DNA of 64,000 nt from Lytechinus pictus (lineage: Eukaryota), in NCBI RefSeq assembly GCF_037042905.1, contig NC_087248.1, positions 9,672,001 through 9,736,000 of the forward strand, in the 5' to 3' direction. The stretch's first letter is position 1. Every line of letters starts with the position of its first letter. Positions 23,602-64,000 of this stretch are shown piece after piece. Both the position numbers and the translations under genes were made by a program. The notes under the pieces were generated by a model. It had not been told where the DNA came from. It ran no database searches and saw nothing but the letters and a program-made list of their open reading frames with translations.

Positions 23602-23632
<31 letters not shown>

Positions 23633-28710: not shown

Positions 28711-28783
28711 GCCCGGTTAGCTCAGTCGGTATAGCATCAGACTTTTAATCTGAGGGTCGCGGGTTCGAGTCCCTCATCGGGCG
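28711..28783 (+). tRNA. trnK: tRNA-Lys(TTT), G22>T
   Basis: Array copy; D-stem mismatch. Confidence 0.75.
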
Positions 28784-29185
28784 ATGGTAACCATTTTCAT
28801 GAAAGTTATGATATAAGCCCTTTACGTTTTTGACATATAAATGTAATCTACATTTTATTTACACAATGCAAAACTTCCAAATGCCTTATCTTTTTCGATA
28901 TCGAATCTTGATAAATGTTTGTATATTTCATTCTAAAAATTCGGCTCAACTCATTATTCAAAATATAATAATTATTACTGGAGATTTAATAATTGAGAGG
29001 CTCTGTATTTAATATTCCATGAACGAAATTTGTTTTTAAATGAAACAATCTATCTCTATCTTAGATTTAGAGGTTAATTTTGCGATGAAATATAAAAAAA
29101 ACTAAGAAAATGTGAACTAATTAATCAAGGACATCATTAGATCACTTATTAGATTTTAATTCATGTTGATACACAACAAACTCAA

Positions 29186-29258
29186 GCCCGGTTAGCTCAG
29201 TCGGTAGAGCATCAGACTTTTAAGCTGAGGGTCGCAGGTTCGAGTCCCTCATCGGGCG
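29186..29258 (+). tRNA. trnK: tRNA-Lys(TTT), T39>G G51>A (possible pseudogene)
   Basis: Array copy; stem mismatches. Confidence 0.65.
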
Positions 29259-29652
29259 ATGGTAAGTATTTTTTTCTTTACGAAGAGCATGCTAGAACTT
29301 TGAAAGCCTTTTGAGTTTTTGACATCTAAACATAGTCATTATAAATTTTGAGCTTTCTTATTGCAAAAACTCTAATAATTAGCCTCAACTTTTGTATACG
29401 AAATGTTTAAAACATTATAAAAATGAAATACCAAATAATTAACATTAATGTATATAGAATTGTTGAATGACAAGTCTAAATAAATACATGCAATTTCTAT
29501 TGTTCATAGAAGAGTTAAAACATGTTTTGATTATCGATAGTATTTGAGATGAAATGTTTCAAAACATTAAGAGTTTGTGAACTAATATCTTAATGACATA
29601 ATCGGCTCTATTATCTGAATTGGATCCAGTTAAAATGTATACATATCTACAA

Positions 29653-29725
29653 GCCCGGTTAGCTCAGTCGGTAGAGCATCAGACTTTTAATCTGAGGGTC
29701 GCGGGTTCGAGTCCCTCGTCGGGCG
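29653..29725 (+). tRNA. trnK: tRNA-Lys(TTT), A66>G
   Basis: Array copy. Confidence 0.85.
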
Positions 29726-30109
29726 ATGGTTACCATTTTCATGATAGTTATGATACAAGCCTTTTACGTTTTTGACATCTAAATATAATCTTCATTTTAT
29801 TTATACAAAGTAAAACTTTCAAATGCCTTATCTTTTTCGATATCAAATCTTGATGAAAATAATGTTCATATATTTCATTCTAAGAATTCGCCTCAACTCA
29901 TTATTTGAATTATGAAAGTTATTGTTTGAGATTTAATGACTGAGAGGCTCTTTATTTAATGTTCCATGAACAAATGTTATTTTCATGAAACATCCGATCG
30001 CTATTTTATATTTCATAGGTAAGTTTTGCGATTAAATAAAAAAAAGGAAGTGTCAACTTATTAGCTCACTAATTAGAATTTGAGTCATGTTAATACACAA
30101 CTATCTCAA

Positions 30110-30182
30110 GCCCGGTTAGTTCAGTCGGTAGAGCATCAGACTTTTAAGCTGAGGGTCGCAGGTTCGAGTCCCTCATCGGGCG
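30110..30182 (+). tRNA. trnK: tRNA-Lys(TTT), C11>T T39>G G51>A (possible pseudogene)
   Basis: Array copy; stem mismatches. Confidence 0.6.
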
Positions 30183-30597
30183 ATGGTTAGTATTTTTTCT
30201 TTACGAAGATCATGCTAGAACTTTGAAAGCCTTTTGAGTTTTTGACATCTAAACATAGTCATTATAAATTTTGAGCTTTCTTATTGCAAAAACTCTAATA
30301 ATTAGCCTCAACTTTTGTATACGAAATGTTTAAAACATTATAAAAATGACATACCAAATAATTAACATTAATGTATATAGAATTTATAATTGAGAAGATC
30401 TTTGTTGAATGACAAGTCTAAATAAATACATGCAATTACTATTGTTCATAGAAGAGTTAAAACATGTTTTGATTATCGATAGTATTTGAGATGAAATGTT
30501 TCAAAACATTAAGAGTTTGTGAACGAATTTATTAATGACATAATCGGCTCACTTATCTGAATTCGATCCAGTTAAAATGTATAAATATCTACAACAA

Positions 30598-30670
30598 GCC
30601 CGGTTAGCTCAGTCGGTAGAGCATCAGACTTTTAATCTGAGGGTCGCGGGTTCGAGTCCCTCATCGGGCG
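30598..30670 (+). tRNA. trnK: tRNA-Lys(TTT)
   Basis: Array consensus. Confidence 0.92.
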
Positions 30671-31052
30671 ATGGTTACCATTTTCATGAAAGTTATGATA
30701 CAAGCCTTTTACGTTTTTGACATCTAAATCTAATCTTCATTTCATTTATAAAATGTAAAACTTTCAAATGCCTTATCTTTTTCGATATCAAATCTTGATG
30801 AAAATAATGTTCATATATTTCATTCTAAGAATTCGCCTTAACTCATTATTTGAATTATGATAGTTATTGTTTGAGATTTAATGACTGAGAGGCTCTTTAT
30901 TTAATGTTCCATGAACAAATTTCATTTTTATGAATCAATCGATCGCTATTTTAGATTTCATATGTAAGTTTTGCGATTAAATTTTAAAAAAGGTGAGAAC
31001 TCATTAGCTCACTAATTAGAATTTGAGTCATGTTAATACACAACTAACTCAA

Positions 31053-31125
31053 GCCCGGTTAGCTCAGTCGGTAGAGCATCAGACTCTTAATCTGAGGGTC
31101 GCGGGTTCGAGTCCCTCATCGGGTG
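31053..31125 (+). tRNA. trnK: tRNA-Lys(CTT), C72>T
   Basis: Loop CTCTTAA. Confidence 0.85.
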
Positions 31126-31527
31126 ATGTTTACCATTTTCATGAAAGTCATGATACAAGCCTTTTAAGTTTTTGACATCTAAATGTAATCTACATTTTAT
31201 TTACGCAATGCAAAACTTTAAAATGCCTTATCTTTTTCGATATCGAATCTTGATAAATGTTTGTATATTTCATTCTAAAAATTCGGCTCAACTCATTATT
31301 TAAAACATAATAATTATTACTGGAGATTTAATAATTGAGAGGCTCTGTATTTAATGTTCTATGAACAAAATTTGTTCTTTCATGAAACAATCTATCTCTA
31401 TCTTAGATTTGTAGGTAAATTTTGCGATGAAAAATAAAAAAAACTAAGAAAATGTGAACTAAATAATCAAGGACATCCTTAGATCACTTATTAGAATTTG
31501 AGTCATGTTGATACACAACTATCTCAA

Positions 31528-31600
31528 GCCCGGTTAGTTCAGTCGGTAGAGCATCAGACTTTTAATCTGAGGGTCGCAGGTTCGAGTCCCTCATCGGGCG
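31528..31600 (+). tRNA. trnK: tRNA-Lys(TTT), C11>T G51>A
   Basis: Array copy. Confidence 0.7.
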
Positions 31601-32015
31601 ATGGTTAGTATTTTTTCTTTACGAAGATCATGCTAGAACTTTGAAAGCCTTTTGAGTTTTTGACATCTAAACATAGTCATTATAAATTTTGAGCTTTCTT
31701 ATTGCAAAAACTCTAATAATTAGCCTCAACTTTTGTATACGAAATGTTTAAAACATTATAAAAATGACACACCAAATAATTAACATTAATGTATATAGAA
31801 TTTATAATTGAGAAGATCTTTGTTGAATGACAAGTCAAAATAAATACATGCAATTACTATTGTTCATAGAAGAGTTAAAACATGTTTTGATTATCGATAG
31901 TATTTGAGATGAAATGTTTCAAAACATTAAGAGTTTGTGAACGAATTTATTAATGACATAATCGGCTCACTTATCTGAATTCGATCCAGTTAAAATGTAT
32001 AAATATCTACAACAA

Positions 32016-32088
32016 GCCCGGTTAGCTCAGTCGGTAGAGCATCAGACTTTTAATCTGAGGGCCGCGGGTTCGAGTCCCTCATCGGGCG
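32016..32088 (+). tRNA. trnK: tRNA-Lys(TTT), T47>C
   Basis: Array copy. Confidence 0.88.
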
Positions 32089-32470
32089 ATGGTTACCATT
32101 TTCATGAAAGTTATGATACAAGCCTTTTACGTTTTTGACATCTAAATCTAATCTTCATTTCATTTATAAAATGTAAAACTTTCAAATGCCTTATCTTTTT
32201 CGATATCAAATCTTGATGAAAATAATGTTCATATATTTCATTCTAAGAATTCGCCTTAACTCATTATTTGAATTATGATAGTTATTGTTTGAGATTTAAT
32301 GACTGAGAGGCTCTTTATTTAATGTTCCATGAACAAATTTCATTTTTATGAATCAATCGATCGCTATTTTAGATTTCATATGTAAGTTTTGCGATTAAAT
32401 TTTAAAAAAGGTGAGAACTCATTAGCTCACTAATTAGAATTTGAGTCATGTTAATACACAACTAACTCAA

Positions 32471-32543
32471 GCCCGGTTAGCTCAGTCGGTAGAGCATCAG
32501 ACTCTTAATCTGAGGGTCGCGGGTTCGAGTCCCTCATCGGGTG
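32471..32543 (+). tRNA. trnK: tRNA-Lys(CTT), C72>T
   Basis: Loop CTCTTAA. Confidence 0.85.
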
Positions 32544-32945
32544 ATGTTTACCATTTTCATGAAAGTCATGATACAAGCCTTTTAAGTTTTTGACATCTAA
32601 ATGTAATCTACATTTTATTTACGCAATGCAAAACTTTAAAATGCCTTATCTTTTTCGATATCGAATCTTGATAAATGTTTGTATATTTCATTCTAAAAAT
32701 TCGGCTCAACTTATTATTTAAAACATAATAATTATTACTGGAGATTTAATAATTGAGAGGCTCTGTATTTAATGTTCCATGAACAAAATTTGTTCTTTCA
32801 TGAAACAATCTATCTCTATCTTAGATTTGTAGGTAAATTTTGCGATGAAAAATAAAAAAAACTAAGAAAATGTGCACTAAATAATCAAGGACATCCTTAG
32901 ATCACTTATTAGAATTTGAGTCATGTTGATACACAACTATCTCAA

Positions 32946-33018
32946 GCCCGGTTAGTTCAGTCGGTAGAGCATCAGACTTTTAATCTGAGGGTCGCAGGTT
33001 CGAGTCCCTCATCGGGCG
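32946..33018 (+). tRNA. trnK: tRNA-Lys(TTT), C11>T G51>A
   Basis: Array copy. Confidence 0.7.
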
Positions 33019-33433
33019 ATGGTTAGTATTTTTTCTTTACGAAGATCATGCTAGAACTTTGAAAGCCTTTTGAGTTTTTGACATCTAAACATAGTCATTA
33101 TAAATTTTGAGCTTTCTTATTGCAAAAACTCTAATAATTAGCCTCAACTTTTGTATACGAAATGTTTAAAACATTATAAAAATGACACACCAAATAATTA
33201 ACATTAATGTATATAGAATTTATAATTGAGAAGATCTTTGTTGAATGACAAGTCTAAATAAATACATGCAATTACTATTGTTCATAGAAGAGTTAAAACA
33301 TGTTTTGATTATCGATAGTATTTGAGATGAAATGTTTCAAAACATTAAGAGTTTGTGAACGAATTTATTAATGACATAATCGGCTCACTTATCTGAATTC
33401 GATCCAGTTAAAATGTATAAATATCTACAACAA

Positions 33434-33506
33434 GCCCGGTTAGCTCAGTCGGTAGAGCATCAGACTTTTAATCTGAGGGTCGCGGGTTCGAGTCCCTCAT
33501 CGGGCG
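33434..33506 (+). tRNA. trnK: tRNA-Lys(TTT)
   Basis: Array consensus. Confidence 0.92.
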
Positions 33507-33892
33507 ATGGTTACCATTTTCATGAAAGTTATGATACAAGCCTTTTACGTTTTTGACATCTAAATCTAATCTTCATTTCATTTATAAAATGTAAAACTTT
33601 CAAATGCCTTATCTTTTTCGATATCAAATCTTGATGAAAATAATGTTCATATATTTCATTCTAAGAATTCGCCTTAACTCATTATTTGAATTATGATAGT
33701 TATTGTTTGAGATTTAATGACTGAGAGGCTCTTTATTTAATGTTCCATGAACAAATTTCATTTTTATGAATCAATCGATCGCTATTTTAGATTTCATAGG
33801 TAAGTTTTGCGATTAAATAAAAAAAAAAGGAAGTGTCAACTTATTAGCTCACTAATTAGAATTTGAGTCATGTTAATACACAACTAACGCAA

Positions 33893-34414: not shown

Positions 34415-34816
34415 ATGTTTACCATTTTCATGAAAGTCATGATACAAGCCTTTTACGTTTTTGACATCTAAATGTAATCTACATTTTATTTACGCAATGC
34501 AAAACTTTAAAATGCCTTATCTTTTTCGATATCGAATCTTGATAAATGTTTGTATATTTCATTCTAAAAATTCGGCTCAACTCATTATTTAAAACATAAT
34601 AATTATTACTGGAGATTTAATAATTGAGAGGCTCTGTATTTAATGTTCCATGAACAAAATTTGTTCTTTCATGAAACAATCTATCTCTATCTTAGATTTG
34701 TAGGTAAATTTTGCGATGAAATATAAAAAAAACTAAGAAAATGTGAACTAATTAATCAAGGACATCCTTAGATCACTTATTAGAATTTGAGTCATGTTGA
34801 TACATAATTATCTCAA

Positions 34817-34889
34817 GCCCGGTTAGCTCAGTCGGTAGAGCCTCAGAATTTTAAACTGAGGGTCGCGGGTTCGAGTCCCTCATCGGGCG
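34817..34889 (+). tRNA. trnK: tRNA-Lys(TTT) variant A26>C C32>A T39>A (possible pseudogene)
   Basis: gagcctcagaattttaaactga. Confidence 0.6.
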
Positions 34890-35306
34890 ATGGTTAGAAT
34901 TTTTTTTCTTTACGAAGAGCATGCTAGAACTTTGAAAGCCTTTTGAGTTTTTGACATCTAAACAAGTCATTATAAATTTTGAGCTTTCTTATTGCAAAAA
35001 CTCTAATAATTAGCCTCAACTTTTGTATACGAAATGTTTAAAGCATTATAAAAATGAGATACCAAAATAATTACCATTAATGTATATAGAATTTATAATT
35101 AAGAAGATCTTTGTTGAATGACAAGTCTAAATAAATACATGCAATTTCTATTGTTCATAGAAGAGTTAAAACATGTTTTGATTATCGATAGTATTTGAGA
35201 TGAAATGTTTCAAAACGTTAAGAGTTTGTGAACTAATTACTTAATGACATAATCGGCTCTATTATCTAAATAAGATCCAGTTAAAATGTATACATATCTA
35301 CAACAA

Positions 35307-35379
35307 GCCCGGTTAGCTCAGTCGGTAGAGCATCAGACTTTTAATCTGAGGGTCGCGGGTTCGAGTCCTTCATCGGGCG
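35307..35379 (+). tRNA. trnK: tRNA-Lys(TTT), C63>T
   Basis: Array copy. Confidence 0.82.
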
Positions 35380-35781
35380 ATGGTTACCATTTTCATGAAA
35401 GTCATGATACAAGCCTCTTATGTTTTTGACATCTAAAGGTAATCTACATTTTATTTACGCAATGCAAAATTTTCAAATGCCTTATCTTTTTCGATATCGA
35501 ATCTTCATAAATGTTTGTATATTTTATTCTCAAAATTCGGCTCAACTCATTATTTAAAACATAATAATTATTACTGGAGATCTAATAATTGAGAGGCTCT
35601 GTATTTAATGCTCCATGAACAAAATTTGTTCTTTTATGAATTAATCGATCGCTATTGTAGATTTCATAGGTAAATTTTGCGATGAAATTTAAAAAAACTA
35701 AGAAAATTTGAACTAATTAATCAAGGACATCATTAGATCACTTATTAGAATTTGAGTCATGTTGATACACAACTATCTCAA

Positions 35782-35848
35782 GACCGGTTAGCTCAGTCGG
35801 TAGAGCATCAGACTTTTAATCTGAGGGTCGCGGGTTCGAGTCCCTCAT
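35782..35848 (+). pseudogene. tRNA-Lys(TTT) pseudogene, C2>A, 3' CGGGCG deleted
   Basis: gaccgg...ccctcat|atg. Confidence 0.85.
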
Positions 35849-36233
35849 ATGTTTACCATTTTCATGAAAGTCATGATACAAGCCTTTTACGTTTTTGACA
35901 TCTAAATCTAATCTACATTTCATTTATACAATGCAAAACTTTCAAATGCCTTATATTTTTCGATATCAAATCTTGATGAAAATAATGTTCATATATTTCA
36001 TTCTAGGAATTCGCCTCAACTCATTATTTGAATTATGATAGTTATTGTTTGAGATTTCATGACTGAGAGGCTCTTTATTTAATGTTCCATGAACAAATGT
36101 TATTTTTCATAAATCAATCGATCGCTATTTTAGATTTTGTAGGTAAGTTTTGCGATTAAATATAAAAAAGGAAGTGTGAACTTATTAGCTCACTAATTAG
36201 AATTTGAGTCATGTTAATACACAACTAACATAA

Positions 36234-36306
36234 GCCCGGTTAGCTCAGTCGGTAGAGCATCAGACTTTTAATCTGAGGGTCGCGGGTTCGAGTCCCTCAT
36301 CGGGCG
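36234..36306 (+). tRNA. trnK: tRNA-Lys(TTT)
   Basis: Array consensus. Confidence 0.92.
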
Positions 36307-36724
36307 ATGTTTACCATTTTCATGACAGTTATGAAACAATGCAAAATTTTCAAAGGCCTTTTACTTATTTGACGTCTAAGTCTTATCTTCATAAATTTTG
36401 AACTTTATTGTAAAAACCTTGTTAATCAGCCTCAACTTATTTGTAATACGAATTGTTTAAAGTATTATAAATAATGAAATACCAAATAATTAACATTAAT
36501 GTATAAATTTTATAATTAAGAAGCTCTTCATTGAATGACATGTCTTAACAAATACATGCAATTTCTATTGTTCATAGAAGAGTTAAACCATGTCTTAGAT
36601 TATCGATAGTATTTGAGATGAAATGTTTCAAAACGTTAAGAGTTTGTGAACTAATTACTTAATGACATAATCGGCTCACTTATCTAAATTAGATCCAGTT
36701 AAAATGTATACATATCTACAACAA

Positions 36725-36797
36725 GCCCGGTTAGCTCAGTCGGTAGAGCATCAGACTTTTAATCTGAGGGTCGCGTGTTCGAGTCCCTCATCGGGCG
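36725..36797 (+). tRNA. trnK: tRNA-Lys(TTT), G52>T
   Basis: Array copy; T-stem mismatch. Confidence 0.7.
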
Positions 36798-37189
36798 ATG
36801 TTTACCATTTTCATGAAAGTCATGATACAAGTCTTTTACGTTTTGGACATCTAAATCTAATTTTAATCTAATCTACATTTTATTTATACAATGCAACATT
36901 TTCAAATGCCTTATCTTTTTCGATATAAAATCATGATGAAAATAATGTTCATATAATTCATTCTAAGAATTCGCCTCAACTCATTATTTGAATTATGATA
37001 GCTATTATATTAGATTTAATTACTGAGAGGCTCTTTATTTAATATTCCATGAACAAATTTTATGTTTTATGAATCAATCGATCGCTATTTTAGATTTCAT
37101 ATGTAAGTTTTGCGATTAAATATAAAAAAGTGAGAACTCATTACCTCACTAATTAGAATTTGAGTCATGTTAATACACTACTAACTCAA

Positions 37190-37262
37190 GCCCGGTTAGC
37201 TCAGTCGGTAGATCATCAGACTTTTAATCTGAGGGTCGCGGGTTCGAGTCCCTCATCGGGCG
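37190..37262 (+). tRNA. trnK: tRNA-Lys(TTT), G24>T
   Basis: Array copy; D-stem mismatch. Confidence 0.75.
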
Positions 37263-37376
37263 ATGTTTACCATTTTCATGAAACTAAAATAACTAAGAAA
37301 ATGTGAACAAATCAATCAAGGACATCCTTTGATCACTTATTAGAATTTGAGTCATGTTGATACACAACTATCTCAA

Positions 37377-37449
37377 GCCCGGTTAGCTCAGTCGGTAGAG
37401 CATCAGACTTTTAATCTGAGGGTCGCGGGTTCGAGTCCCTCATCGGGCG
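37377..37449 (+). tRNA. trnK: tRNA-Lys(TTT)
   Basis: Array consensus. Confidence 0.92.
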
Positions 37450-37866
37450 ATGGTTAGTATTTTTTTTCATTACGAAGAGCATGCTAGAACTTTGAAAGCC
37501 TTTTGAGTTTTTGACATCTAAACATAGTCATTATAAATTTTGAGCTTTCTAATTGCAAAAACTTTATTAATTAGCCTCAACTTTTGTATTTGAAATGTTT
37601 AAAGCATTATAAAAATGAAATACCAAATAATTCACATTAATGTATATAGAATTTATAATTAAGAAGATCTTTGTTGAATGAATAGTCTAAACGAATACAT
37701 GCAATTTTTATTGTTCATAGAAGAGTTAAAACATGTTTTGATTATCGATAGTATTTCAGATGAAATATTTCAAAACATTAAGAGTTTGTGAACAAATTTC
37801 TTAATGACATAATCGGCTCACTTATCTGAATTTGATCCAGTTAAAATGTATACATATCTACAACAA

Positions 37867-37939
37867 GCCCGGTTAGCTCAGTAGGTAGAGCATCAGACTT
37901 TTAATCTGAGGGTCGCGGGTTCAAGTCCCTCATCGGGCG
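37867..37939 (+). tRNA. trnK: tRNA-Lys(TTT), C17>A G57>A
   Basis: Array copy. Confidence 0.85.
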
Positions 37940-38334
37940 ATGGTTACCATTTTCATGAAAGTTATGATACAAGCCTCTTACGTTTTTGACATCTAAATCT
38001 AATCTAAATCTAATCTACATTTCATTTATACAATGTAAAATTTTCAAATGCCTTTTCTTTTTCGATATCTAATCATGATGAAAATAATGTTCATATAATT
38101 CATTCTAAGAATTCGCCTCTGCTCATTATTGGAATTATGATATTTATTATTTGAGATTTAATGACTGAGAGGCTCTTTATTTAATATTCCATGAACAAAT
38201 TTCATTTTTTATGAATCAATCGATCGCTATTTTAGATTTCATATGTAAGTTTTGCGATTAAATTTAAAAAAAGGGTGAGAACTCATTAGCTCACTAATTA
38301 GAATTTGAGTCATGTTAATACACAACTAACTCAA

Positions 38335-38407
38335 GCCCGGTTAGCTCAGTCGGTAGAGCATCAGACTCTTAATCTGAGGGTCGCGGGTTCGAGTCCCTCG
38401 TCGGGTG
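38335..38407 (+). tRNA. trnK: tRNA-Lys(CTT), A66>G C72>T
   Basis: Loop CTCTTAA. Confidence 0.8.
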
Positions 38408-38809
38408 ATGTTTACCATGTTCATGAAAGTCATGATACAAGCCTTTTACGTTTTTGACATCTAAATGTAATCTACATTTTATTTACGCAATGCAAAACTT
38501 TAAAATGCCTTATCTTTTTCGATATCGAATCTTGATAAATGTTTGTATATTTCATTCTAAAAATTCGGCTCAACTCATTATTTAAAACATAATAATTATT
38601 ACTGGAGATTTAATAATTGAGAGGCTCTGTATTTAATGTTCCATGAACAAAATTTGTTTTTTCATAAAACACTCTATCTCTATCTTAGATTTGTAGGTAA
38701 ATTTTGCGATGAAATATAAAAAAAACTAAGAAAATGTGAACTAATTAATCAAGGACATCCTTAGATCACTTATTAGAATTTGAGTCATGTTGATACATAA
38801 CTATCTCAA

Positions 38810-53591: not shown

Positions 53592-53972
53592 ATGTTTACC
53601 ATTTTCATGAAAGTCATGATACAAGCCTTTTACGTTTTTGACATCTAAATGTAATCTACATTTTTTTACGCAATGCAAAAATTTTCAAATGCCTTATCTT
53701 TTTCGATATCGAATCTTGATAAATGTTTGTATATTTCATTCTCAAAATTCGGCTCAACTCATTATTTAAAACATAATAATTATTACTGGAGATTTAATAA
53801 TTGAGAGGCTCTGTATTTAATGTTCCATGAACAAAATTTGTTCTTTTATGAAACAATCTATCTCTACCTTAGATTTGTAGGTAAATTTTGCGATGAAATA
53901 TAAGACAAGAAAGTGAAAACTCATTAGCTCACTAATTAGAATTTGAGTCATGTTAATACACTACTAACTCAT

Positions 53973-54045
53973 ACCCGGTTAGCTCAGTTGGTAGAGCATC
54001 AGACTCTTAATCTGAGGGTCGCGGGTTCGAGTCCCTCATCGGGTG
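53973..54045 (+). tRNA. trnK: tRNA-Lys(CTT), A1-T72 pair, C17>T
   Basis: HOR copy. Confidence 0.82.
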
Positions 54046-54426
54046 ATGTTTACCATTTTTATGAAAGTCATGATACAAGCCTTTTACGTTTTTGACATCT
54101 AAATGTAATCTACATTTTCTTACGCAATGCAAACATTTTCAAATGCCTTATCTTTTTCGATATCGAATCTTGATAAATGTTTGTATATTTCATTCTCAAA
54201 ATTCGGCTCAACTCATTATTTAAAACATAATAATTATTACTGGAGATTTAATAATTGAGAGGCTCTGTATTTAATGTTCCATGAACAAAATTTGTTCTTT
54301 TATGAAACAATCTATCTCTACCTTAGATTTGTAGGTAAATTTTGCGATGAAATATAAGAAAAGAAAGTGAAAACTCATTAGCTCACTAATTAGAATTTGA
54401 GTCATGTTAATACACTTCTAACTCAT

Positions 54427-54499
54427 ACCCGGTAAGCTCAGTCGGTAGAGCATCAGACTTTTAATCTGAGGGTCGCGGGTTCGAGTCCCTCATCGGGCG
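54427..54499 (+). tRNA. trnK: tRNA-Lys(TTT), G1>A T8>A (possible pseudogene)
   Basis: HOR copy. Confidence 0.6.
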
Positions 54500-54916
54500 A
54501 TGGTTAGTATTTTTTTTCATTACGAAGAGCATGCTAGAATTTTGAAAGCCTTTTGAGTTTTTGACATCTAAACATAGTCATTATAAATTTTGAGCTTTCT
54601 AATTGCAAAAACTTTATTAATTAGCCTCAACTTTTGTATTTGAAATGTTTAAAGCATTATAAAAATGAAATACCAAATAATTCACATTAATGTATAAAGA
54701 ATTTATAATTAAGAAGATCTTTGTTGAATGACAAGTCTAAACGAATACATGCAATTTTTATTGTTCATAGAAGAGTTAAAACATGTTTTGATTATCGATA
54801 GTATTTCAGATGAAATATTTCAAAACATTAAGAGTTTGTGAACAAATTTCTTAATGACATAATCGGCTCACTTATCTGAATTTGATCCAGTTAAAATGTA
54901 TACATATCTACAACAA

Positions 54917-54989
54917 GCCCGGTTAGCTCAGTCGGTAGAGCATCAGACTTTTAATCTGAGGGTCGCGGGTTCAAGTCCCTCATCGGGCG
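54917..54989 (+). tRNA. trnK: tRNA-Lys(TTT), G57>A
   Basis: HOR copy. Confidence 0.9.
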
Positions 54990-55383
54990 ATGGTTACCAT
55001 TTTCATGAAAGTTATGATACAGGCCTCTTACGTTTTTGACATCTAAATCTAATCTAAATCTAATCTACATTTCATTTATACAATGTAAAATTTTCAAATG
55101 CCTTTTCTTTTTCGATATCTAATCATGATATAAAAATAATGTTCATATAATTCATTCTAAGAATTCGCCTCAACTCATTATTTGAATTATGATAGTTATT
55201 ATTTGAGATTTAATGGCTGAGAGGCTCTTTATTTAATATTCCATGAGCAAATTTTATTTTTTATGAATCAATCGATCGCTATTTTAGATTTCATATGTAA
55301 GTTTTGCGATTAAATAAAAAAAAGTGAGAACTCATTACCTCACTAATTAGAATTTGAGTCATGTTAATACATTACTTACTCAT

Positions 55384-55456
55384 ACCCGGTTAGCTCAGTT
55401 CGTAGAGCATCAGACTCTTAATCTGAGGGTCGCGGGTTCGAGTCCCTCATCGGGCG
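55384..55456 (+). tRNA. trnK: tRNA-Lys(CTT), G1>A C17>T G18>C (possible pseudogene)
   Basis: HOR copy. Confidence 0.55.
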
Positions 55457-55837
55457 ATGTTTACCATTTTCATGAAAGTCATGATACAAGCCTTTTACGT
55501 TTTTGACATCTAAATGTAATCTACATGTTTTTACGCAATGCAAACATTTTCAAATGCCTTATCTTTTTCGATATCGAATCTTGATAAATGTTTGTATATT
55601 TCATTCTCAAAATTCGGCTCAACTCATTATTTAAAACATAATAATTATTACTGGAGATTTAATAATTGAGAGGCTCTGTATTTAATGTTCCATGAACAAA
55701 ATTTGTTCTTTTATGAAACAATCTATCTCTACCTTAGATTTGTAGGTAAATTTTGCGATGAAATATAAGAAAAGAAAGTGAAAACTCATTAGCTCACTAA
55801 TTAGAATTTGAGTCATGTTAATACACTACTAACTCAT

Positions 55838-55910
55838 ACCCGGTTAGCTCAGTTGGTAGAGCATCAGACTCTTAATCTGAGGGTCGCAGGTTCGAGTCCC
55901 TCATCGGGCG
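55838..55910 (+). tRNA. trnK: tRNA-Lys(CTT), G1>A C17>T G51>A (possible pseudogene)
   Basis: Array copy. Confidence 0.6.
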
Positions 55911-56291
55911 ATGTTTACCATTTTCATGAAAGTCATTCTACAAGCCTTTTACGTTTTTGACATCTAAATGTAATCTACATTTTTTTACGCAATGCAAACA
56001 TTTTCAAATGCCTTATCTTTTTCGATATCGAATCTTGATAAATGTTTGTATATTTCATTCTCAAAATTCGGCTCAACTCATTATTTAAAACATAATAATT
56101 ATTACTGGAGATTTAATAATTGAGAGGCTCTGTATTTAATGTTCCATGAACAAAATTTGTTCTTTTATGAAACAATCTATCTCTACCTTAGATTTGTAGG
56201 TAAATTTTGCGATGAAATATAAGAAAAGAAAGTGAAAACTCATTAGCTCACGAATTAGAATTTGAGTCATGTTAATATACAACTAACGCAT

Positions 56292-56364
56292 GCCCGGTAA
56301 GCTCAGTCGGTAGAGCATCAGACTTTTAATCTGAGGGTCGCGGGTTCGAGTCCCTCATCGGGCG
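56292..56364 (+). tRNA. trnK: tRNA-Lys(TTT), T8>A
   Basis: Array copy. Confidence 0.7.
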
Positions 56365-56742
56365 ATGTTTACCATTTTCATGAAAGTCATGATACAAGTC
56401 TTTTACGTTTTGGACATCTAAATGTAATCTACATTTTATTTACGCAATGTATAACTTTCAAATGCCTTATCTTTTTCGATATCGAATCTTGATAAATGTT
56501 TGTATATTTTATTCTAAAAATTCGGCTCAACTCATTATTTAAAACATAATAATTATTACTGGAGATTTAATAATTGATAGGCTCTGTATTTAATATTCCA
56601 TGAACAAAATTTGTTCTTTTATGAATGAATCGATCGCTGTTGTAGATTTCATATGTAAGTTTTGCGATTAATATAAAAAAAAGTGAGAACTCATTACCTC
56701 ACTAATTAGAATTTGAGTCATGTTAATACACAACTAACTCAA

Positions 56743-57287: not shown

Positions 57288-57704
57288 ATGGTTAGTATTT
57301 TTTTCTTTACGAAGAGCATGCTAGAACTTTGAAAGCCTTTTGAATTTGTTGACATCTAAACATAGTCATTATTAATTTTGAGCTTTCTTATTCCAAAAAC
57401 TCTATTAATTAGCCTCAACTTTTGTATACGAAATGTTTAAAGCATTATAAAAATGAAATACCAAATAATTCACATTAATGTATATAGAATTTATAATTGA
57501 GAAGATCTTTGTTGAATGACAAGTCTAAATAAATACATGCAATTTCTATTGTTCATAGAAGAGTTAAAACATGTTTTGATTATCGATAGTATATGAGATG
57601 AAATGTTTCAAAACATTTAGAGTTTGTGAACTAATTTATTAATGACATAATCGGCTCACTTATCTGAATTCGATCCAGTTAAAATGTATAAATATCTCCA
57701 ACAA

Positions 57705-57777
57705 GCCCGGTTAGCTCAGTCGGTAGAGCATCAGACTTTTAATCTGAGGGTCGCGGGTTCGAGTCCCTCATCGGGCA
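57705..57777 (+). tRNA. trnK: tRNA-Lys(TTT), G73>A
   Basis: Discriminator variant. Confidence 0.88.
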
Positions 57778-58164
57778 ATGGTTACCATTTTCATGAAAGT
57801 TATGATACAAGCATTTTACGTTTTTGACATCTAAATCTAATCTTCATTTCATTTATAAAATGTAAAACTTTCAATACCTTATCTTTTTCGATATCAAATC
57901 TTGATGAAAATAATGTTCATATATTTCATTCTAAGAATTCGCCTTAACTCATTATTTGAATTATGATAGTTATTGTTTGAGATTTAATGACTGAGAGGCT
58001 CTTTATTTAATGTTCCATGAACAAATTTCATTTTTTATGAATCAATCGATCGCTATTTTAAATTTCATATGTAAGTTTTGCGATTAAATTAAAAAAAAAG
58101 TGATAATTCATTAGCTCACTTGACTAATTAGAATTTGAGTCATGTTAATACACAACTAACTCAA

Positions 58165-58237
58165 GCCCGGTTAGCTCAGTCGGTAGAGCATCAGACTCTT
58201 AATCTGAGGGTCGCGGGTTCAAGTCCCTCATCGGGCG
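58165..58237 (+). tRNA. trnK: tRNA-Lys(CTT), G57>A
   Basis: Loop CTCTTAA. Confidence 0.88.
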
Positions 58238-58639
58238 ATGGTTACCATTTTCATGAAAGTCATGATTCAAGCCTTTTAAGTTTTTGACATCTAAATGTAA
58301 TCTACATTTTATTTACGCAATGCAAAACTTTCAAATGCCTTATCTTTTTCGATATCGAATCTTGATTAATGTTTGTATATTTCATTCTAAAAATTCGGCT
58401 CAACTCATTATGTAAAACATAATAATTATTACTGGAGATTTAATAATTGAGAGGCTCTGTATTTAATGTTCCATGAACAAAATTTGTTCTTTCATGAAAC
58501 AATCTATCTCTATCTTAGATTTGTAGGTAAATTTTGCGATGAAATATAAAAAAAACTAAGAAAATGTGAACTAAATAATCAAGGACATCCTTAGATCACT
58601 TATTAGAATTTGAGTCATGTTGATACACAACTATCTGAA

Positions 58640-58712
58640 GCCCGGTTAGTTCAGTCGGTAGAGCATCAGACTTTTAAGCTGAGGGTCGCAGGTTCGAGTC
58701 CCTCATCGGGCG
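58640..58712 (+). tRNA. trnK: tRNA-Lys(TTT), C11>T T39>G G51>A (possible pseudogene)
   Basis: Array copy. Confidence 0.6.
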
Positions 58713-59128
58713 ATGGTTAGTATTTTTTCAGTACGAAGAGCATGCTAGAACTTTGAAAGCCTTTTGAATTTGTTGACATCTAAACATAGTCATTATTAAT
58801 TTTGAGCTTTCTTATTCCAAAAACTCTATTAATTAGCCTCAACTTTTGTATACGAAATGTTTAAAGCATTATAAAAATGAAATACCAAATAATTCACATT
58901 AATGTATATAGAATTTATAATTGAGAAGATCTTTGTTGAATGACAAGTCTAAATAAATACATGCAATTTCTATTGTTCATAGAAGAGTTAAAACATGTTT
59001 TGATTATCGATAGTATATGAGATGAAATGTTTCAAAACATTTAGAGTTTGTGAACTAATTTATTAATGACATAATCGGCTCACTTATCTGAATTCGATCC
59101 AGTTAAAATGTATAAATATCTCCAACAA

Positions 59129-59201
59129 GCCCGGTTAGCTCAGTCGGTAGAGCATCAGACTTTTAATCTGAGGGTCGCGGGTTCGAGTCCCTCATCGGGC
59201 A
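59129..59201 (+). tRNA. trnK: tRNA-Lys(TTT), G73>A
   Basis: HOR copy. Confidence 0.88.
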
Positions 59202-59589
59202 ATGGTTACCATTTTCATGAAAGTTATGATACAAGCATTTTACGTTTTTGACATCTAAATCTAATCTTCATTTCATTTATAAAATGTAAAACTTTCAAAT
59301 ACCTTATCTTTTTCGATATCAAATCTTGATGAAAATAATGTTCATATATTTCATTCTAAGAATTCGCCTTAACTCATTATTTGAATTATGATAGTTATTG
59401 TTTGAGATTTAATGACTGAGAGGCTCTTTATTTAATGTTCCATGAACAAATTTCATTTTTTATGAATCAATCGATCGCTATTTTAAATTTCATATGTAAG
59501 TTTTGCGATTAAATTAAAAAAAAAGTGATAATTCATTAGCTCACTTGACTAATTAGAATTTGAGTCATGTTAATACACAACTAACTCAA

Positions 59590-59662
59590 GCCCGGTTAGC
59601 TCAGTCGGTAGAGCATCAGACTCTTAATCTGAGGGTCGCGGGTTCAAGTCCCTCATCGGGCG
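59590..59662 (+). tRNA. trnK: tRNA-Lys(CTT), G57>A
   Basis: HOR copy. Confidence 0.88.
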
Positions 59663-60064
59663 ATGGTTACCATTTTCATGAAAGTCATGATTCAAGCCTT
59701 TTAAGTTTTTGACATCTAAATGTAATCTACATTTTATTTACACAATGCAAAACTTTCAAATGCCTTATCTTTTTCGATATCGAATCTTGATTAATGTTTG
59801 TATATTTCATTCTAAAAATTCGGCTCAACTCATTATGTAAAACATAATAATTATTACTGGAGATTTAATAATTGAGAGGCTCTGTATTTAATGTTCCATG
59901 AACAAAATTTGTTCTTTCATGAAACAATCTATCTCTATCTTAGATTTGTAGGTAAATTTTGCGATGAAATATAAAAAAAACTAAGAAAATGTGAACTAAA
60001 TAATCAAGGACATCCTTAGATCACTTATTAGAATTTGAGTCATGTTGATACACAACTATCTGAA

Positions 60065-60137
60065 GCCCGGTTAGTTCAGTCGGTAGAGCATCAGACTTTT
60101 AAGCTGAGGGTCGCAGGTTCGAGTCCCTCATCGGGCG
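60065..60137 (+). tRNA. trnK: tRNA-Lys(TTT), C11>T T39>G G51>A (possible pseudogene)
   Basis: HOR copy. Confidence 0.6.
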
Positions 60138-60552
60138 ATGGTTAGTATTTTTTCAGTACGAAGAGCATGCTAGAACTTTGAAAGCCTTTTGAGTTTTTGA
60201 CATCTAAACATAGTCATTATAAATGTTGAGCTTTCTTATTGCAAAAACTCTAATAATTAGCCTCAACTTTTGTATACGAAATGTTTAAAACATTATAAAA
60301 ATGAAATACCAAATAATTAACATTAATGTATATAGAATTTATAATTGAGAAGATCTTTGTTGAATGACAAGTCTAAATAAATGCATGCAATTTCTATTGT
60401 TCATAGAAGAGTTAAAACATGTTTTGATTATCGATAGTATTTGAGATGAAATGTTTCAAAACATGAAGAGTTTGTGAACTAATTTATTAATGACATAATC
60501 GGCTCACTTATCTGAATTCGATCCAGTTAAAATGTATAAATATCTCCAACAA

Positions 60553-60625
60553 GCCCGGTTAGCTCAGTCGGTAGAGCATCAGACTTTTAATCTGAGGGTC
60601 GCGGGTTCGAGTCCCTCATCGGGCA
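60553..60625 (+). tRNA. trnK: tRNA-Lys(TTT), G73>A
   Basis: HOR copy. Confidence 0.88.
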
Positions 60626-61011
60626 ATGGTTACCATTTTCATGAAAGTTATGATACAAGCATTTTACGTTTTTGACATCTAAATCTAATCTTCATTTCAT
60701 TTATACAATGCAAAAATTTCAAATGCCTTATCTTTTTCGACATCAAATCTTGATAAAAATAATGTTCATATATTTCATTCTAAGAATTCGCCTCAACTCA
60801 TTATTTGAATTATGATAGTTATTGTTTGAGATTTAATGACTGAGAGGCTCTTTATTTAATGTACCATGAACAAATGTTATTTTTCATGAAACAATCGATC
60901 GCTATTTTAGATTTCATAGGTAAGTTTTGCGATTAAATATAACAAAAGGAAGTGTGAACTTATTAGCTCACTAATTAGAATTTGAGTCATGTTAATACAC
61001 AACTAACGCAA

Positions 61012-61503: not shown

Positions 61504-61576
61504 GCCCGGTTAGCTCAGTCGGTAGAGCATCAGACTTTTAATCTGAGGGTCGCGGGTTCGAGTCCCTCATCGGGCG
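61504..61576 (+). tRNA. trnK: tRNA-Lys(TTT)
   Basis: Array consensus. Confidence 0.92.
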
Positions 61577-61973
61577 ATGGTTACCATTTTCATGAAAGTT
61601 ATGATACATACCTTTTACGTTTTTGACATCTAAATCTAATCTAAATCTAATCTACATTTCATTTATACAATGCAAATATTTCAAATGCCTTATCATTTTC
61701 GACATCAAATCTTGATAAAAATAATGTTCATACATTTCATTCTAAGAATTCGCCTCAACTCATTATTTGAATTATGATAGTTATTGTTTGAGATTTAATG
61801 ACTGAGAGGCTCATTATTTAATGTTCCATGAACAAATGTTATTTTTCATGAAACAATCGATCGCTATTTTAGATTTCATAGGTAAGTTTTGCGATTGAAT
61901 ATAACAAAAGGAAGTGTGAACTTATTAGCTCACTAATTAGAATTTGAGTCATGTTAATACACAACTAACGCAA

Positions 61974-62046
61974 GCCTGGTTAGCTCAGTCGGTAGAGCAT
62001 CAGTCTTTTAATCTGAGGGTCGCGGGTTCGAGTCCCTCATCGGGCG
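61974..62046 (+). tRNA. trnK: tRNA-Lys(TTT), C4>T A31>T
   Basis: Array copy. Confidence 0.68.
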
Positions 62047-62446
62047 ATGTTTACCATTTTTATGAAAGTCATGATACAAGCCTTTTACGTTTTTGACATC
62101 TAAATGTAATCTACATTTTATTTACGCAATGCAAAACTTTCAAATGCCTTATCTTTTTCGATATCGAATCTTGATAAATGTTTGTATATTTCATTCTAAA
62201 AATTCGGCTCAACTCATTATTTAAAACATAATAATTATTACTGGAGATTTAATAATTGAGAGGCTCTGTATTTAATGTTCCATGAACTAAATTTCTTCGT
62301 TCATGAAACAATATATCTCTATCTTAGATTTGTAGGTAAATTTTGCGATGAAATATAAAAAACCTAAGAAAATGTGAACTAATAATCAAGGACATCATTA
62401 GATCACTTATTAGAATTTGAGTCATGTTGATACACAACTATCTCAA

Positions 62447-62519
62447 GCCCGGTTAGCTCAGTCGGTAGAGCATCAGACTTTTAAGCTGAGGGTCGCAGGT
62501 TCGAGTCCCTCATCGGGCG
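62447..62519 (+). tRNA. trnK: tRNA-Lys(TTT), T39>G G51>A (possible pseudogene)
   Basis: Array copy. Confidence 0.65.
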
Positions 62520-62935
62520 ATGGTTAGTACTTTTTTCTTTACGAAGAGCATGCTAGAACTTTGAAAGCATTTTGAATTTTTGACATCTAAACTTAGTCAT
62601 GATACATTTTGAGCTTTCTTATTGCAAAAACTCTATTAATTAGCCTCAACTTTTGTATACGAAATGTTTAAAGCATTATAAAAATGAAATACCAAATAAT
62701 TAACATTTATTTATATAGAATTCATAATTGAGAAGATCTTTGTTGAATGACAAGTCTAAATAAATACTTGCAATTTCTATTGTTCATAGAAGAGTTAAAA
62801 CATGTTTTGATTATCGAAAGTATTTGAGATGAAATGTTTCAAAACATTAAGAGTTTGTGAACTAATTACTTAATGACATAATCGGCTCACTTATCTGAAT
62901 TCGATCCAGTTAAAATGTATACATATCTACAACAA

Positions 62936-63008
62936 GCCCGGTTAGCTCAGTCGGTAGAGCATCAGACTTTTAATCTGAGGGTCGCGGGTTCGAGTCCCTC
63001 ATCGGGCG
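62936..63008 (+). tRNA. trnK: tRNA-Lys(TTT)
   Basis: Array consensus. Confidence 0.92.
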
Positions 63009-63395
63009 ATGGTTGCCATTTTCATGAAAGTTATGATACAAGCCTTTTACGTTTTTGACATCTAAATCTAATCTACATTTCATTTATACAATGCAAAACT
63101 TTCAAATGCCTTATCTTTTTCGATATCAAATCTTGATGAAAATAATGTTCATATATTTCATTCTAAGAATTCGCCTCAACTCATTATTTGAATTATGATA
63201 GTTATTGTTTGAGATTTAATGACTGAGAGGCTCTTTATTTAATGTTCCATGAACAAATTTCATTTTTCATGAAACAAGCGATCGCTATTTTAGATTTCAT
63301 AGGTAAGTTTTGCGATTAAATGATAAAAAAAGGAAGTGTGAACTTATTAGCTCACTAATTAGAATTTGAGTCATGTTAATACACAACTAACGCAA

Positions 63396-63468
63396 GCCCG
63401 GTTAGCTCAGTCGGTAGAGCATCAGACTTTTAATCTGAGGGTCGCGGGTTCGAGTCCCTCATCGGGCG
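63396..63468 (+). tRNA. trnK: tRNA-Lys(TTT)
   Basis: Array consensus. Confidence 0.92.
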
Positions 63469-63884
63469 ATGTTTATCATTTTTCATGAGAGTTATGAAAC
63501 AATGCAAAATTTTCAAAGGCCTTTTACTTATTTGACGTCTAAGTCTTATCTTCATAAATTTTGAACTTTATTGTAAAAACCCTGTTAATCAGCCTCAACT
63601 TATTTGTAATACGAATTGTTTAAAGTATTATAAATAATGAAATACCAAATAATTAACATTAATGTATAGACTTAATAATTAAGAAGCTCTTTATTGAATG
63701 ACATGTCTAAACAAATACATGCAATTTCTATTGTTCATAGAAGAGTTAAACCATGTTTTAGATTATCGATAGTATTTGAGATGAAATGTTTTAAAACATT
63801 AAGAGTTTGTGAAGTAATTACTTAATGACATAATCGGCTCACTTATCTGAATTCGATCCTTTTAAAATCTATATCTATACAACA

Positions 63885-63957
63885 ACCCGGTTAGCTCAGT
63901 CGGTAGAGCATCAGACTTTTAATCTGAGGGTCGCGGGTTCGAGTCCCTCATCGGGTG
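63885..63957 (+). tRNA. trnK: tRNA-Lys(TTT), A1-T72 pair
   Basis: acccgg...tcgggtg. Confidence 0.85.
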
Positions 63958-64000
63958 ATGTTTATCATTTTTCATGAAATTATGAAACAATGCAACATTT

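What the first reader, a model, noticed from the sequence alone, without database searches (positions are those of the whole stretch)
28711..64000. Satellite-like tandem array of at least 78 tRNA-Lys genes with shifting higher-order repeats
All copies are on the + strand, the left edge is sharp, and the array is open on the right. Offsets between matching copies define successive HORs: 3-mer 1418 bp (30110/31528/32946), 9-mer 3993 bp (34817/38810/42803), 7-mer 3012 bp (44220/47232), 4-mer 1865 bp (51654/53519/55384), 3-mer 1424-1425 bp (57705/59129/60553), plus a 6506-bp offset (50237/56743). The spacers fall into about four mutually homologous types. This is a tRNA locus evolving like satellite DNA by unequal crossover. 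Only ~17 TTT copies equal the consensus, so it may also serve as a TFIIIC/Pol III chromatin domain or a dosage reservoir for AAA codons (inference).
Basis: partly seen in the sequence, partly recalled or inferred. Interest (0 to 1): 0.7.

Follow-up and report, generated by a model that had tools for sequence, protein, structure and literature searches.

The report
Tandem array of 81 lysine tRNA genes
A 37-kb stretch of this animal genome (earlier notes of this scan call it a sea urchin) holds 81 head-to-tail lysine tRNA genes, a well-built but ordinary kind of locally amplified tRNA gene cluster, reshaped by repeated unequal crossing-over, with about half the copies looking intact.

Summary
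Rfam's tRNA model finds exactly 78 genes, all on the + strand, from 28711 to 63957. The array runs only 1.2 kb past the window: two more units, then about 1 kb of foreign DNA and one lone copy, giving 81 genes in 37.3 kb. Exactly 17 copies equal the consensus.

It is a locally amplified tRNA-Lys(UUU) gene array remodelled by in-register unequal crossover. One junction unit is a clean chimera of two neighbour types. Gene bodies are about ten times more conserved than spacers across old unit types, but no better conserved among the youngest duplicates.

Of the 80 arrayed units, 42 keep the cloverleaf, 38 are damaged, and 78 keep a T-run terminator 11-12 nt downstream. The 16 CTT copies are an anticodon shift on the UUU-type body, 15 of them in one spacer lineage. 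The array holds 17 of the genome's 21 exact copies.

This scan has already reported a similar initiator-tRNA array in the same genome. It is a new member of a known kind (Arabidopsis SYY cluster, human 1q23.3 tRNA repeat).

The parts
28711..64000 (+). The part of the tRNA-Lys array inside the window: 78 units of 451-492 bp (four units are 187 bp). Each unit is a 73-nt gene plus an AT-rich spacer (26% GC). The array continues to G000:C4:9736863.
28711..28783 (+). First gene of the array. Its 5' flank is unique DNA, so the left edge is sharp.
   Evidence: BLAST of the spacer types against 1-28710 finds nothing
30072..33818 (+). Three-unit higher-order repeat, period 1418 bp, about 2.6 copies, 99.5% identical.
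34427..46260 (+). Nine-unit higher-order repeat, period 3993 bp, about 2.9 copies. The cores differ at 0-1 base per 3.6 kb.
43835..49977 (+). Seven-unit higher-order repeat, period 3012 bp, 2 copies. The core 43942-46965 is identical to its copy. It overlaps the end of the nine-unit block.
46774..47231 (+). Chimeric unit at the 3012-bp junction. The first ~190 nt equal unit 46320 and the rest equals units 43768/35782.
51586..56367 (+). Four-unit higher-order repeat, period 1865 bp, about 2.6 copies. It contains an internal 454-bp doublet of CTT units.
57308..60938 (+). Three-unit higher-order repeat, period 1424/1425 bp, about 2.5 copies.
49496..51356 (+). Left copy of a 1.86-kb segment repeated 6506 bp downstream (56002-57862), 97.9% identical.
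37190..37376 (+). Short 187-bp unit: a gene with G24T plus a 114-bp spacer. It recurs at 41183, 45176 and 48188 inside the higher-order repeats.
35782..35854 (+). Gene copy that has lost the 3' acceptor strand, so a pseudogene. It recurs at 39775 and 43768. A similar truncated CTT copy lies at 34348-34413.
31053..31125 (+). Example of the 16 copies with anticodon CTT on the UUU-type body. The others start at 32471, 33893, 34348, 38335, 42328, 50237, 51654, 52108, 53519, 53973, 55384, 55838, 56743, 58165 and 59590.
30598..30670 (+). Example of the 17 exact consensus tRNA-Lys(UUU) genes (67.8 bits). It is identical to the dispersed genes on C18, C13 and C8 (two copies).
1..28710 (.). Unique left flank, not part of the array. 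It holds ~160-bp tandem repeats (5318-7336) and an EGF-like exon (9895-10173, +).

Best explanation
This is a real nuclear tRNA-Lys(UUU) gene array. A tRNA-Lys gene and its downstream DNA were amplified head-to-tail to 80 units, with a lone 81st gene beside them.

The array keeps being rebuilt by in-register unequal crossover between misaligned units. Each event copies blocks of 3 to 9 units. That produces the successive higher-order repeats and the hybrid units at their junctions.

New point mutations enter gene bodies about as fast as spacers. Over the long run, damaged genes are lost and the canonical sequence persists. This is array turnover plus purifying selection, that is, concerted and birth-and-death evolution.

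About half of the units (42 of 80) still look like working Pol III genes: cloverleaf intact, A and B boxes present, and a T-run terminator 11-12 nt downstream. Together they are most of the genome's supply of this tRNA-Lys(UUU) variant.

The CTT copies stem from essentially one T34C change that spread with its spacer lineage. They would read AAG as lysine if expressed.

Shown: the structure, the crossover signatures, the conservation pattern and the share of the genome's copies. Inferred: transcription, dosage role and lysine charging of the CTT variants.
For: - Gene calls: 78 Rfam tRNA hits in the window and 3 more just beyond it.
- Repeat structure: higher-order repeat identities of 97.9-100%, against about 24% mean spacer diversity between units.
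- Crossover signature: a clean chimeric unit at the 3012-bp junction. The boundaries of the 3012-bp and 6506-bp duplications fall in the same phase of the unit.
- Diversity: pi is 0.038 in the gene and 0.237 in the spacer. Parsimony gives 0.78 against 2.0 changes per site.
- Age dependence: the ratio of gene to spacer divergence falls from about 1 among young duplicates to 0.10 between old spacer classes.
- Copy quality: 17 exact copies, 25 fold-preserving variants, 33 with stem or invariant-base hits, 5 with indels.
- Compensation: G1A and C72T together restore an A-U pair in three copies.
- Promoter elements: the A box fits in 63 of 80 units, the B box in 77 of 80, both in 61 of 80.
- Terminator: 78 of 80 units have a run of 4-8 T starting 11-12 nt after the gene.
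- Share of the genome: 17 of the 21 exact copies found in the genome lie in the array.
- CTT copies: the canonical Lys-CUU genes of this genome have a different body. Fifteen of the 16 CTT copies sit in one spacer lineage that is at most 7% diverged.
- Local origin: the spacers match no other tRNA-Lys locus fetched and not the 405-bp tRNA-bearing mobile repeat of this genome.
Against: - There is no expression or chromatin evidence of any kind.
- The core higher-order repeat copies are identical over 3-3.7 kb. Their copy number rests on the assembly alone.
- The consensus carries a C50.U64 mismatch in the T stem. Two genes on C9 with a perfect T stem score higher, 74-75 against 67.8 bits. The array type may therefore not be the main working tRNA-Lys(UUU).
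- Among the youngest duplicates the gene body is no better conserved than the spacer (9/1533 against 38/8073 sites, P=0.55). Present-day constraint per copy is undetectable.
- In the best-studied analogue, Arabidopsis, clustered tRNA genes are silenced (PMC7544208) and copy number seems to drift neutrally (PMC2886086).
Confidence: 0.8

Rival explanations
1. Silent, redundant cluster. The array is a largely repressed, heterochromatin-like block whose copy number drifts neutrally. The 4 dispersed copies and the C9 genes supply the cell. Conservation of the gene body reflects recent common descent and occasional use at most.
For: - Arabidopsis clustered tRNA genes are transcriptionally silent and methylated despite intact promoter elements (PMC7544208). 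Copy number there appears neutral (PMC2886086).
- Here 38 of 80 copies are damaged.
- Young duplicates show no constraint.
- Gene-body changes are enriched at CpG sites: 21 of 57 events on 14 of 73 sites, P=0.0014.
Against: - Gene divergence stays near 4% while spacers reach 39% between classes, a ratio of 0.10. That is hard to obtain without selection on the genes.
- The terminator is kept in 78 of 80 units.
- Spacer CpG observed/expected is 0.87, no lower than in the flank at 0.81. There is therefore no footprint of heavy germline methylation.
- Even the Arabidopsis cluster is reactivated in a specific tissue, by the title and abstract of PMC12308677 as listed (paper not read).
Confidence: 0.3
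2. Assembly inflation. The near-identical 3993-, 3012- and 1865-bp blocks are over-counted or mis-joined by the assembler. The true array is shorter or differently ordered.
For: The core copies differ at 0-1 base over 3-3.7 kb. This is the kind of repeat that assemblers resolve only with reads longer than the block. No read evidence could be obtained.
Against: - There are no N runs in the window or in the first 3 kb beyond it.
- The blocks are nested and partial (2.9, 2 and 2.6 copies), with clean hybrid units at their junctions. That looks like biology rather than a simple collapsed or doubled contig.
- The older layers, namely the four spacer classes and the repeats at 97-99.5% identity, cannot be artefacts.
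Confidence: 0.12
3. tRNA-derived mobile element or SINE-like satellite. The units are copies of a transposable repeat that merely carries a tRNA-like head, like the 405-bp repeat reported elsewhere in this genome.
For: The genome is rich in tRNA-like repeats, with about 73,000 rough first-look candidates for the tRNA model.
Against: - The units share nothing but chance AT-rich matches with that repeat.
- An own-genome search with a whole unit matched elsewhere only through the 72-nt gene part. That tool skips very common words.
- The units have no poly-A tail, and the array shows no spacer DNA beyond its edges.
- The gene part is the genome's ordinary tRNA-Lys(UUU) sequence, identical to dispersed single genes with unrelated flanks.
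Confidence: 0.03
4. Chromatin-domain function. The array matters mainly as a dense block of TFIIIC/Pol III binding sites that acts as a boundary or organiser, not as a source of tRNA.
For: The B box is intact in 77 of 80 units, one roughly every 470 bp. A human tRNA tandem repeat has been proposed as a boundary element (PMC4041453).
Against: Nothing here is specific to this idea. Conservation covers the whole gene body and the terminator, not just the B box. The neighbouring genes were not characterised.
Confidence: 0.05

Closest known systems
Arabidopsis thaliana chromosome 1 tRNA-Ser/Tyr (SYY) array: 81 genes in 27 triplet units (Kane, Freeling and Lyons 2010, PMC2886086; Hummel et al. 2020, PMC7544208)
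   Same: - Tens of tRNA genes lie head-to-tail.
- Expansion was by unequal crossover, duplicating one or several units at a time.
- It shows concerted evolution.
- It mixes working and non-working copies.
- The gene count happens to be the same, 81.
   Different: - Here a single amino-acid family fills the array and the base unit holds one gene.
- The multi-unit blocks are longer, up to 9 units, and virtually identical.
- This is an animal genome.
- Silencing, shown for Arabidopsis, is untested here.
Human 1q23.3 tRNA variable-number tandem repeat (PMC4041453)
   Same: It is a tandem repeat carrying tRNA genes and is copy-number variable and unstable. A structural or boundary role has been proposed for it.
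   Different: The human unit is 7.3 kb, GC-rich, holds several different tRNA genes and binds CTCF. Here the unit is about 470 bp, AT-rich, and holds one gene.
Higher-order repeat satellites such as centromeric alpha satellite (from general knowledge)
   Same: Adjacent monomers are 15-40% diverged while multi-monomer blocks are over 99% identical. Hybrid monomers sit at block junctions. Several higher-order repeat domains lie side by side.
   Different: Each monomer contains a Pol III gene under selection. The array is only 37 kb. Nothing suggests a centromere role.
Isoacceptor anticodon shifts in eukaryotic tRNA genes (Rogers and Griffiths-Jones 2014, PMC3923123)
   Same: A single base change at position 34 turns a UUU-type gene into a CUU-type one without other changes. 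Lys is among the families where such shifts were reported. tRNA-Lys identity rests mainly on the anticodon.
   Different: Here one shift has been multiplied to 16 copies by array amplification.
   Same: They are in the same genome and have the same architecture: homogeneous head-to-tail tRNA genes with short spacers.
   Different: They carry different genes and unrelated spacers. This is the largest array seen so far in this genome and the one with the clearest higher-order repeats.

Membership tests
Tandem nuclear tRNA gene array (homogeneous tDNA cluster) | Many co-oriented genes of one tRNA family at regular short spacing | tested here: met
   There are 78 genes in the window, 2 more units and 1 lone copy beyond it. 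All are on the + strand, at 451-492 bp spacing.
Tandem nuclear tRNA gene array (homogeneous tDNA cluster) | Units score as tRNA and fold as a cloverleaf | tested here: met
   All 78 score 46.6-69.1 bits against a cut-off of 29. For the copies folded, the cloverleaf lies within 0.1-1.8 kcal/mol of the minimum-energy fold. The consensus has one C50.U64 mismatch.
Tandem nuclear tRNA gene array (homogeneous tDNA cluster) | Pol III signals: internal A and B boxes and a downstream T-run | tested here: met
   The A box fits in 63 of 80 units and the B box in 77 of 80. A run of at least 4 T starts 11-12 nt downstream in 78 of 80. These are pattern matches only, with no binding data.
Tandem nuclear tRNA gene array (homogeneous tDNA cluster) | Genes are transcribed into mature tRNA | not testable with these tools
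Higher-order-repeat satellite organisation | Multi-unit blocks are much more alike than adjacent units, and several block periods coexist | tested here: met
   Blocks are 97.9-100% identical, against about 76% mean identity between unit spacers.
Higher-order-repeat satellite organisation | Hybrid units and in-register junctions, the signature of unequal crossover | tested here: met
   Unit 46774 is a clean chimera. The 3012-bp and 6506-bp duplications start and end at the same unit phase.
SINE or tRNA-derived mobile repeat | Dispersed copies of the whole unit, an A-rich or repeat tail, and insertion signatures | tested here: not met
   Only the gene part recurs elsewhere (with the caveat that common words are skipped). 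There is no similarity to the 405-bp mobile repeat or to other Lys loci.
Canonical tRNA-Lys(CUU) genes (for the 16 CTT copies) | The body sequence of this genome's Lys-CUU isoacceptor | tested here: not met
   The CTT copies carry the UUU-type anticodon stem, T arm and acceptor stem. The genome's Lys-CUU genes differ at these places.

The most novel reading that the evidence does not exclude
The array may be a stage-specific, for example oocyte or early-embryo, supply of a distinct tRNA-Lys(UUU) variant marked by a conserved C50.U64 T-stem mismatch. That variant would be separate from the perfect-stem genes on C9. The amplified CTT-on-UUU-body copies would be expressed and would add AAG-decoding capacity that does not depend on the U34 modification pathway. 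This would be a tRNA counterpart of the maternal-type and somatic-type RNA gene sets described for fish and frogs.
Probability: 0.1. Interest if true: 0.6.

Novelty: new member of a known kind. Interest (0 to 1): 0.35.

Why it matters
The array is a compact, gap-free example of a gene family evolving like satellite DNA, with selectable genes inside each monomer. Two processes can be read off the same 37 kb. The hybrid units and nested blocks record the order of unequal crossovers. The contrast between young and old duplicates shows how slowly selection cleans a highly redundant array. It also shows how a single anticodon change can be multiplied to a fifth of the copies by array dynamics alone. 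If the array is transcribed, it carries most of this genome's tRNA-Lys(UUU) gene dosage. Its copy number is probably polymorphic, which would make it a natural handle on tRNA dosage in a developmental model animal. None of this is new in kind.

Tried and rejected
   - Later steps used only a family accession, retrieval by coordinates and local scripts on sequences already held.

2. Crossovers inside the tRNA gene. I looked at whether higher-order repeat boundaries cluster in the tRNA gene. Raw run ends looked clustered at phase 68-94. Once the mismatch-rich transition zones were trimmed, the cores begin and end in spacers as often as near genes, so I dropped the claim. Some units do pair a gene of one lineage with a spacer of another (57215/58640, 52562/54427), which places some exchanges near the gene's 3' end.

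3. Transcription-associated mutagenesis. Young duplicates show 2.1 times more variable sites in genes than in spacers (P=0.022). The excess vanishes when the two recombinant groups are removed (ratio 1.25, P=0.55).

4. Conserved upstream element. No spacer block stands out.

5. Ancestral flank. I searched for spacer homology in the left flank, the right flank, the dispersed Lys genes and the Lys-CUU arrays. None was found.

6. Relation to the 405-bp tRNA-bearing mobile repeat. None was found.

7. Genes in the left flank. Pfam on its ORFs gave only one EGF-like exon. I did not determine whether the array lies in an intron.

8. Species. The name 'painted sea urchin' comes from earlier notes. I did not verify it.

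Full report
**What is there**

The window is G000:C4:9672001-9736000. Rfam's tRNA model at its curated threshold finds exactly 78 genes. All are on the + strand, run from 28711 to 63957, and score 46.6-69.1 bits against a cut-off of 29. ARAGORN independently of them tRNA-Lys with anticodon ttt or ctt.

The window has no N. The array does not run on indefinitely. In the next 10 kb (L001) there are two more units, at 375 and 803. The second lacks 12 nt of the anticodon loop. About 1 kb of unrelated DNA follows, then a lone tRNA-Lys(UUU) gene at 1893 with different flanks. The total is 81 genes in 37.3 kb, C4:9,700,711-9,737,965.

Upstream of the first gene there is nothing resembling a spacer, so the left edge is sharp.

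**Unit anatomy**

- Each unit is a 73-nt gene plus an AT-rich spacer (26% GC), 451-492 bp in all. Four units are only 187 bp.
- In 78 of 80 units a run of 4-8 T starts 11-12 nt after the gene. In the other two it starts at 37 nt.
- The B box fits in 77 of 80 units, the A box in 63 of 80, and both in 61 of 80.
- Spacers are homologous along their whole length. They fall into four main classes plus a deletion derivative.
- No spacer block stands out as a conserved upstream element.

**Higher-order repeats**

| Period (bp) | Units per block | Extent in window | Identity |
|---|---|---|---|
| 1418 | 3 | 30072-33818 | 99.5% |
| 3993 | 9 | 34427-46260, about 2.9 copies | cores differ at 0-1 base per 3.6 kb |
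| 3012 | 7 | 43835-49977 | core identical |
| 1865 | 4 | 51586-56367 | first pair of copies differs at 1 base |
| 1424/1425 | 3 | 57308-60938 | 96.8-100% by segment |
| 6506 | 1.86-kb segment | 49496-51356 against 56002-57862 | 97.9% |

Labelling units at 2% distance gives ABC DEF DEF DGEH (IJKLMNOPQ)x2 IJKLMNO RST LMNORSU VWX YYOZ YYOZ ....

**Mechanism of array change**

The unit at 46774-47231 sits at the junction of the 3012-bp duplication and is a clean chimera. Its first ~190 nt are identical to the preceding unit type and the rest is identical to the K-type units, with no mismatch on either side. Units 45853 and 49786 are chimeric in the same way.

The two duplications present as exactly two copies begin and end at the same phase of the unit: 175/192 for 3012 bp and 165/158 for 6506 bp. 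These are the expected marks of homologous, in-register unequal exchange between misaligned units.

I first thought the exchange points clustered in the tRNA gene. After trimming the transition zones, that did not hold. A few units do combine a gene of one lineage with the spacer of another, so some exchanges fall near the gene's 3' end.

**Selection**

- Nucleotide diversity is 0.038 in the gene and 0.237 in the spacer.
- On a tree built from spacers only, genes take 0.78 changes per site and spacers 2.0.
- The contrast depends on age. Between the old spacer classes (39% spacer divergence) genes differ by 4%, a ratio of 0.10. Among the youngest duplicates the ratio is about 1.
- The apparent two-fold excess of gene changes in young duplicates (P=0.022) comes from two recombinant groups. 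It disappears without them (9/1533 against 38/8073 sites, P=0.55).

So mutations enter the genes freely, as expected with 80-fold redundancy. They are removed only over the long term.

The states G1.U72, A1.C72 and A1-U72 all occur, and A1-U72 restores a pair in three copies. Gene-body changes are enriched at CpG sites (21 of 57 events, P=0.0014). Spacer CpG content is not depleted relative to the flank, 0.87 against 0.81.

**Quality of the copies**

| Class | Copies (of 80 arrayed units) |
|---|---|
| Exact consensus | 17 |
| Changes that keep every pair and every invariant base (15 TTT, 10 CTT) | 25 |
| A stem or invariant base hit | 33 |
| Indels | 5 |

The consensus itself has a C50.U64 mismatch in the T stem that no copy has repaired. 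The same 73-nt sequence occurs as single genes with unrelated flanks on C18, C13 and twice on C8. It is therefore an ordinary gene sequence of this genome rather than an array oddity, and the array holds 17 of the 21 exact copies found.

Two further tRNA-Lys(UUU) genes on C9 have a perfect T stem and score higher, at 74-75 bits. Which type supplies the cell is unknown.

**The CTT copies**

Sixteen copies read CTT. This genome's normal tRNA-Lys(CUU) genes have a different anticodon stem, T arm and acceptor stem, and form their own arrays on C2 and C25. The CTT copies here are therefore T34C shifts on the UUU-type body.

Fifteen of them lie in one spacer lineage that is at most 7% diverged. One, at 33893, lies in another class. 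This amounts to essentially one mutation multiplied by array amplification, plus one second event or exchange. Among the CTT copies the gene is only weakly more conserved than the spacer, 0.034 against 0.054.

Isoacceptor shifts of this kind, Lys included, are documented, and tRNA-Lys identity rests mainly on the anticodon (PMC3923123). Charging with lysine is therefore a reasonable inference, not a result.

**What it is not**

- The spacers match no other Lys locus fetched.
- They do not match the 405-bp tRNA-bearing mobile repeat reported 580 kb away.
- A whole-unit search of the genome matched elsewhere only through the gene (with the tool's caveat about common words).
- A SINE-like or mobile origin is therefore unlikely.

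**What could not be done**

Later steps used a family accession, coordinates, or local scripts only.

As a result there is no read support for the copy number of the virtually identical blocks and no expression evidence. Nested, partial blocks with clean hybrid junctions argue for biology, but they do not prove the count.

**Comparison with what is known**

- The closest analogue is the Arabidopsis chromosome 1 Ser/Tyr array. It has 81 genes and expanded by unequal crossover of one or several units. It mixes working and dead copies and evolves in concert (PMC2886086).
- That cluster is silenced by DNA methylation (PMC7544208). By the title and abstract listed, it is reactivated in root tips (PMC12308677, paper not read).
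- A human tRNA tandem repeat at 1q23.3 is copy-number variable and has been proposed as a boundary element (PMC4041453).
- Within this scan, a 48-copy initiator-tRNA array was already reported in the same genome, with a remark that a larger lysine array exists.
- The present locus is thus a new, particularly clear member of a known kind.

**Verdict**

The satellite-like and unequal-crossover reading is supported. The dosage role is plausible but untested. The chromatin-domain role is unsupported. Interest is moderate to low.

Noticed in passing
L011:1-10000 (G000:C2:54117000-54126999, - strand): This is a second tandem array, of canonical tRNA-Lys(CUU) genes at roughly 650-980 bp spacing. One copy has anticodon CTA (87-159), amber-reading by anticodon, and also carries other changes. 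One copy has TTT (8034-8107). Anticodon changes therefore recur in this genome's Lys arrays.
   Followed up: partly
L008:1000-1072 (-) and L009:1001-1073 (+), G000:C9 around 5.88 and 5.98 Mb: Two tRNA-Lys(UUU) genes have a perfect T stem and a TTCAAGT T loop. They score 74-75 bits, higher than the array type with its C50.U64 mismatch. They may be the ancestral or main working form.
   Followed up: partly
G000:C25:772626-794220 and G000:C4:1259108-1275631: Further clusters of tRNA-Lys(CUU)-type genes were seen as about 88-90% matches to the gene part. For C25, only its first 10 kb was fetched (L010).
   Followed up: no
window 5318-7336: Blocks of a tandem repeat of about 160 bp (4-5 copies each, 76-87% matches) lie in the unique left flank.
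   Followed up: no
window 9895-10173 (+): An open frame has an EGF-like domain (Pfam PF00008, E=9e-8). It is probably an exon of a neighbouring gene. Whether the array lies in an intron was not determined.
   Followed up: no
whole genome G000: The first look of the tRNA family search reports about 73,000 rough candidates. This points to very many tRNA-like repeats in this genome.
   Followed up: no
L001:1040-1890 (G000:C4:9737040-9737890): About 0.85 kb of unrelated, partly CT-rich DNA separates the last array unit from a lone tRNA-Lys(UUU) gene. That gene's 3' trailer resembles the trailers of the dispersed genes on C18 and C13.
   Followed up: no
window 36776: The only difference between the first two 3993-bp copies over 3.6 kb lies inside a tRNA gene. 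It is G52T and breaks a T-stem pair.
   Followed up: yes
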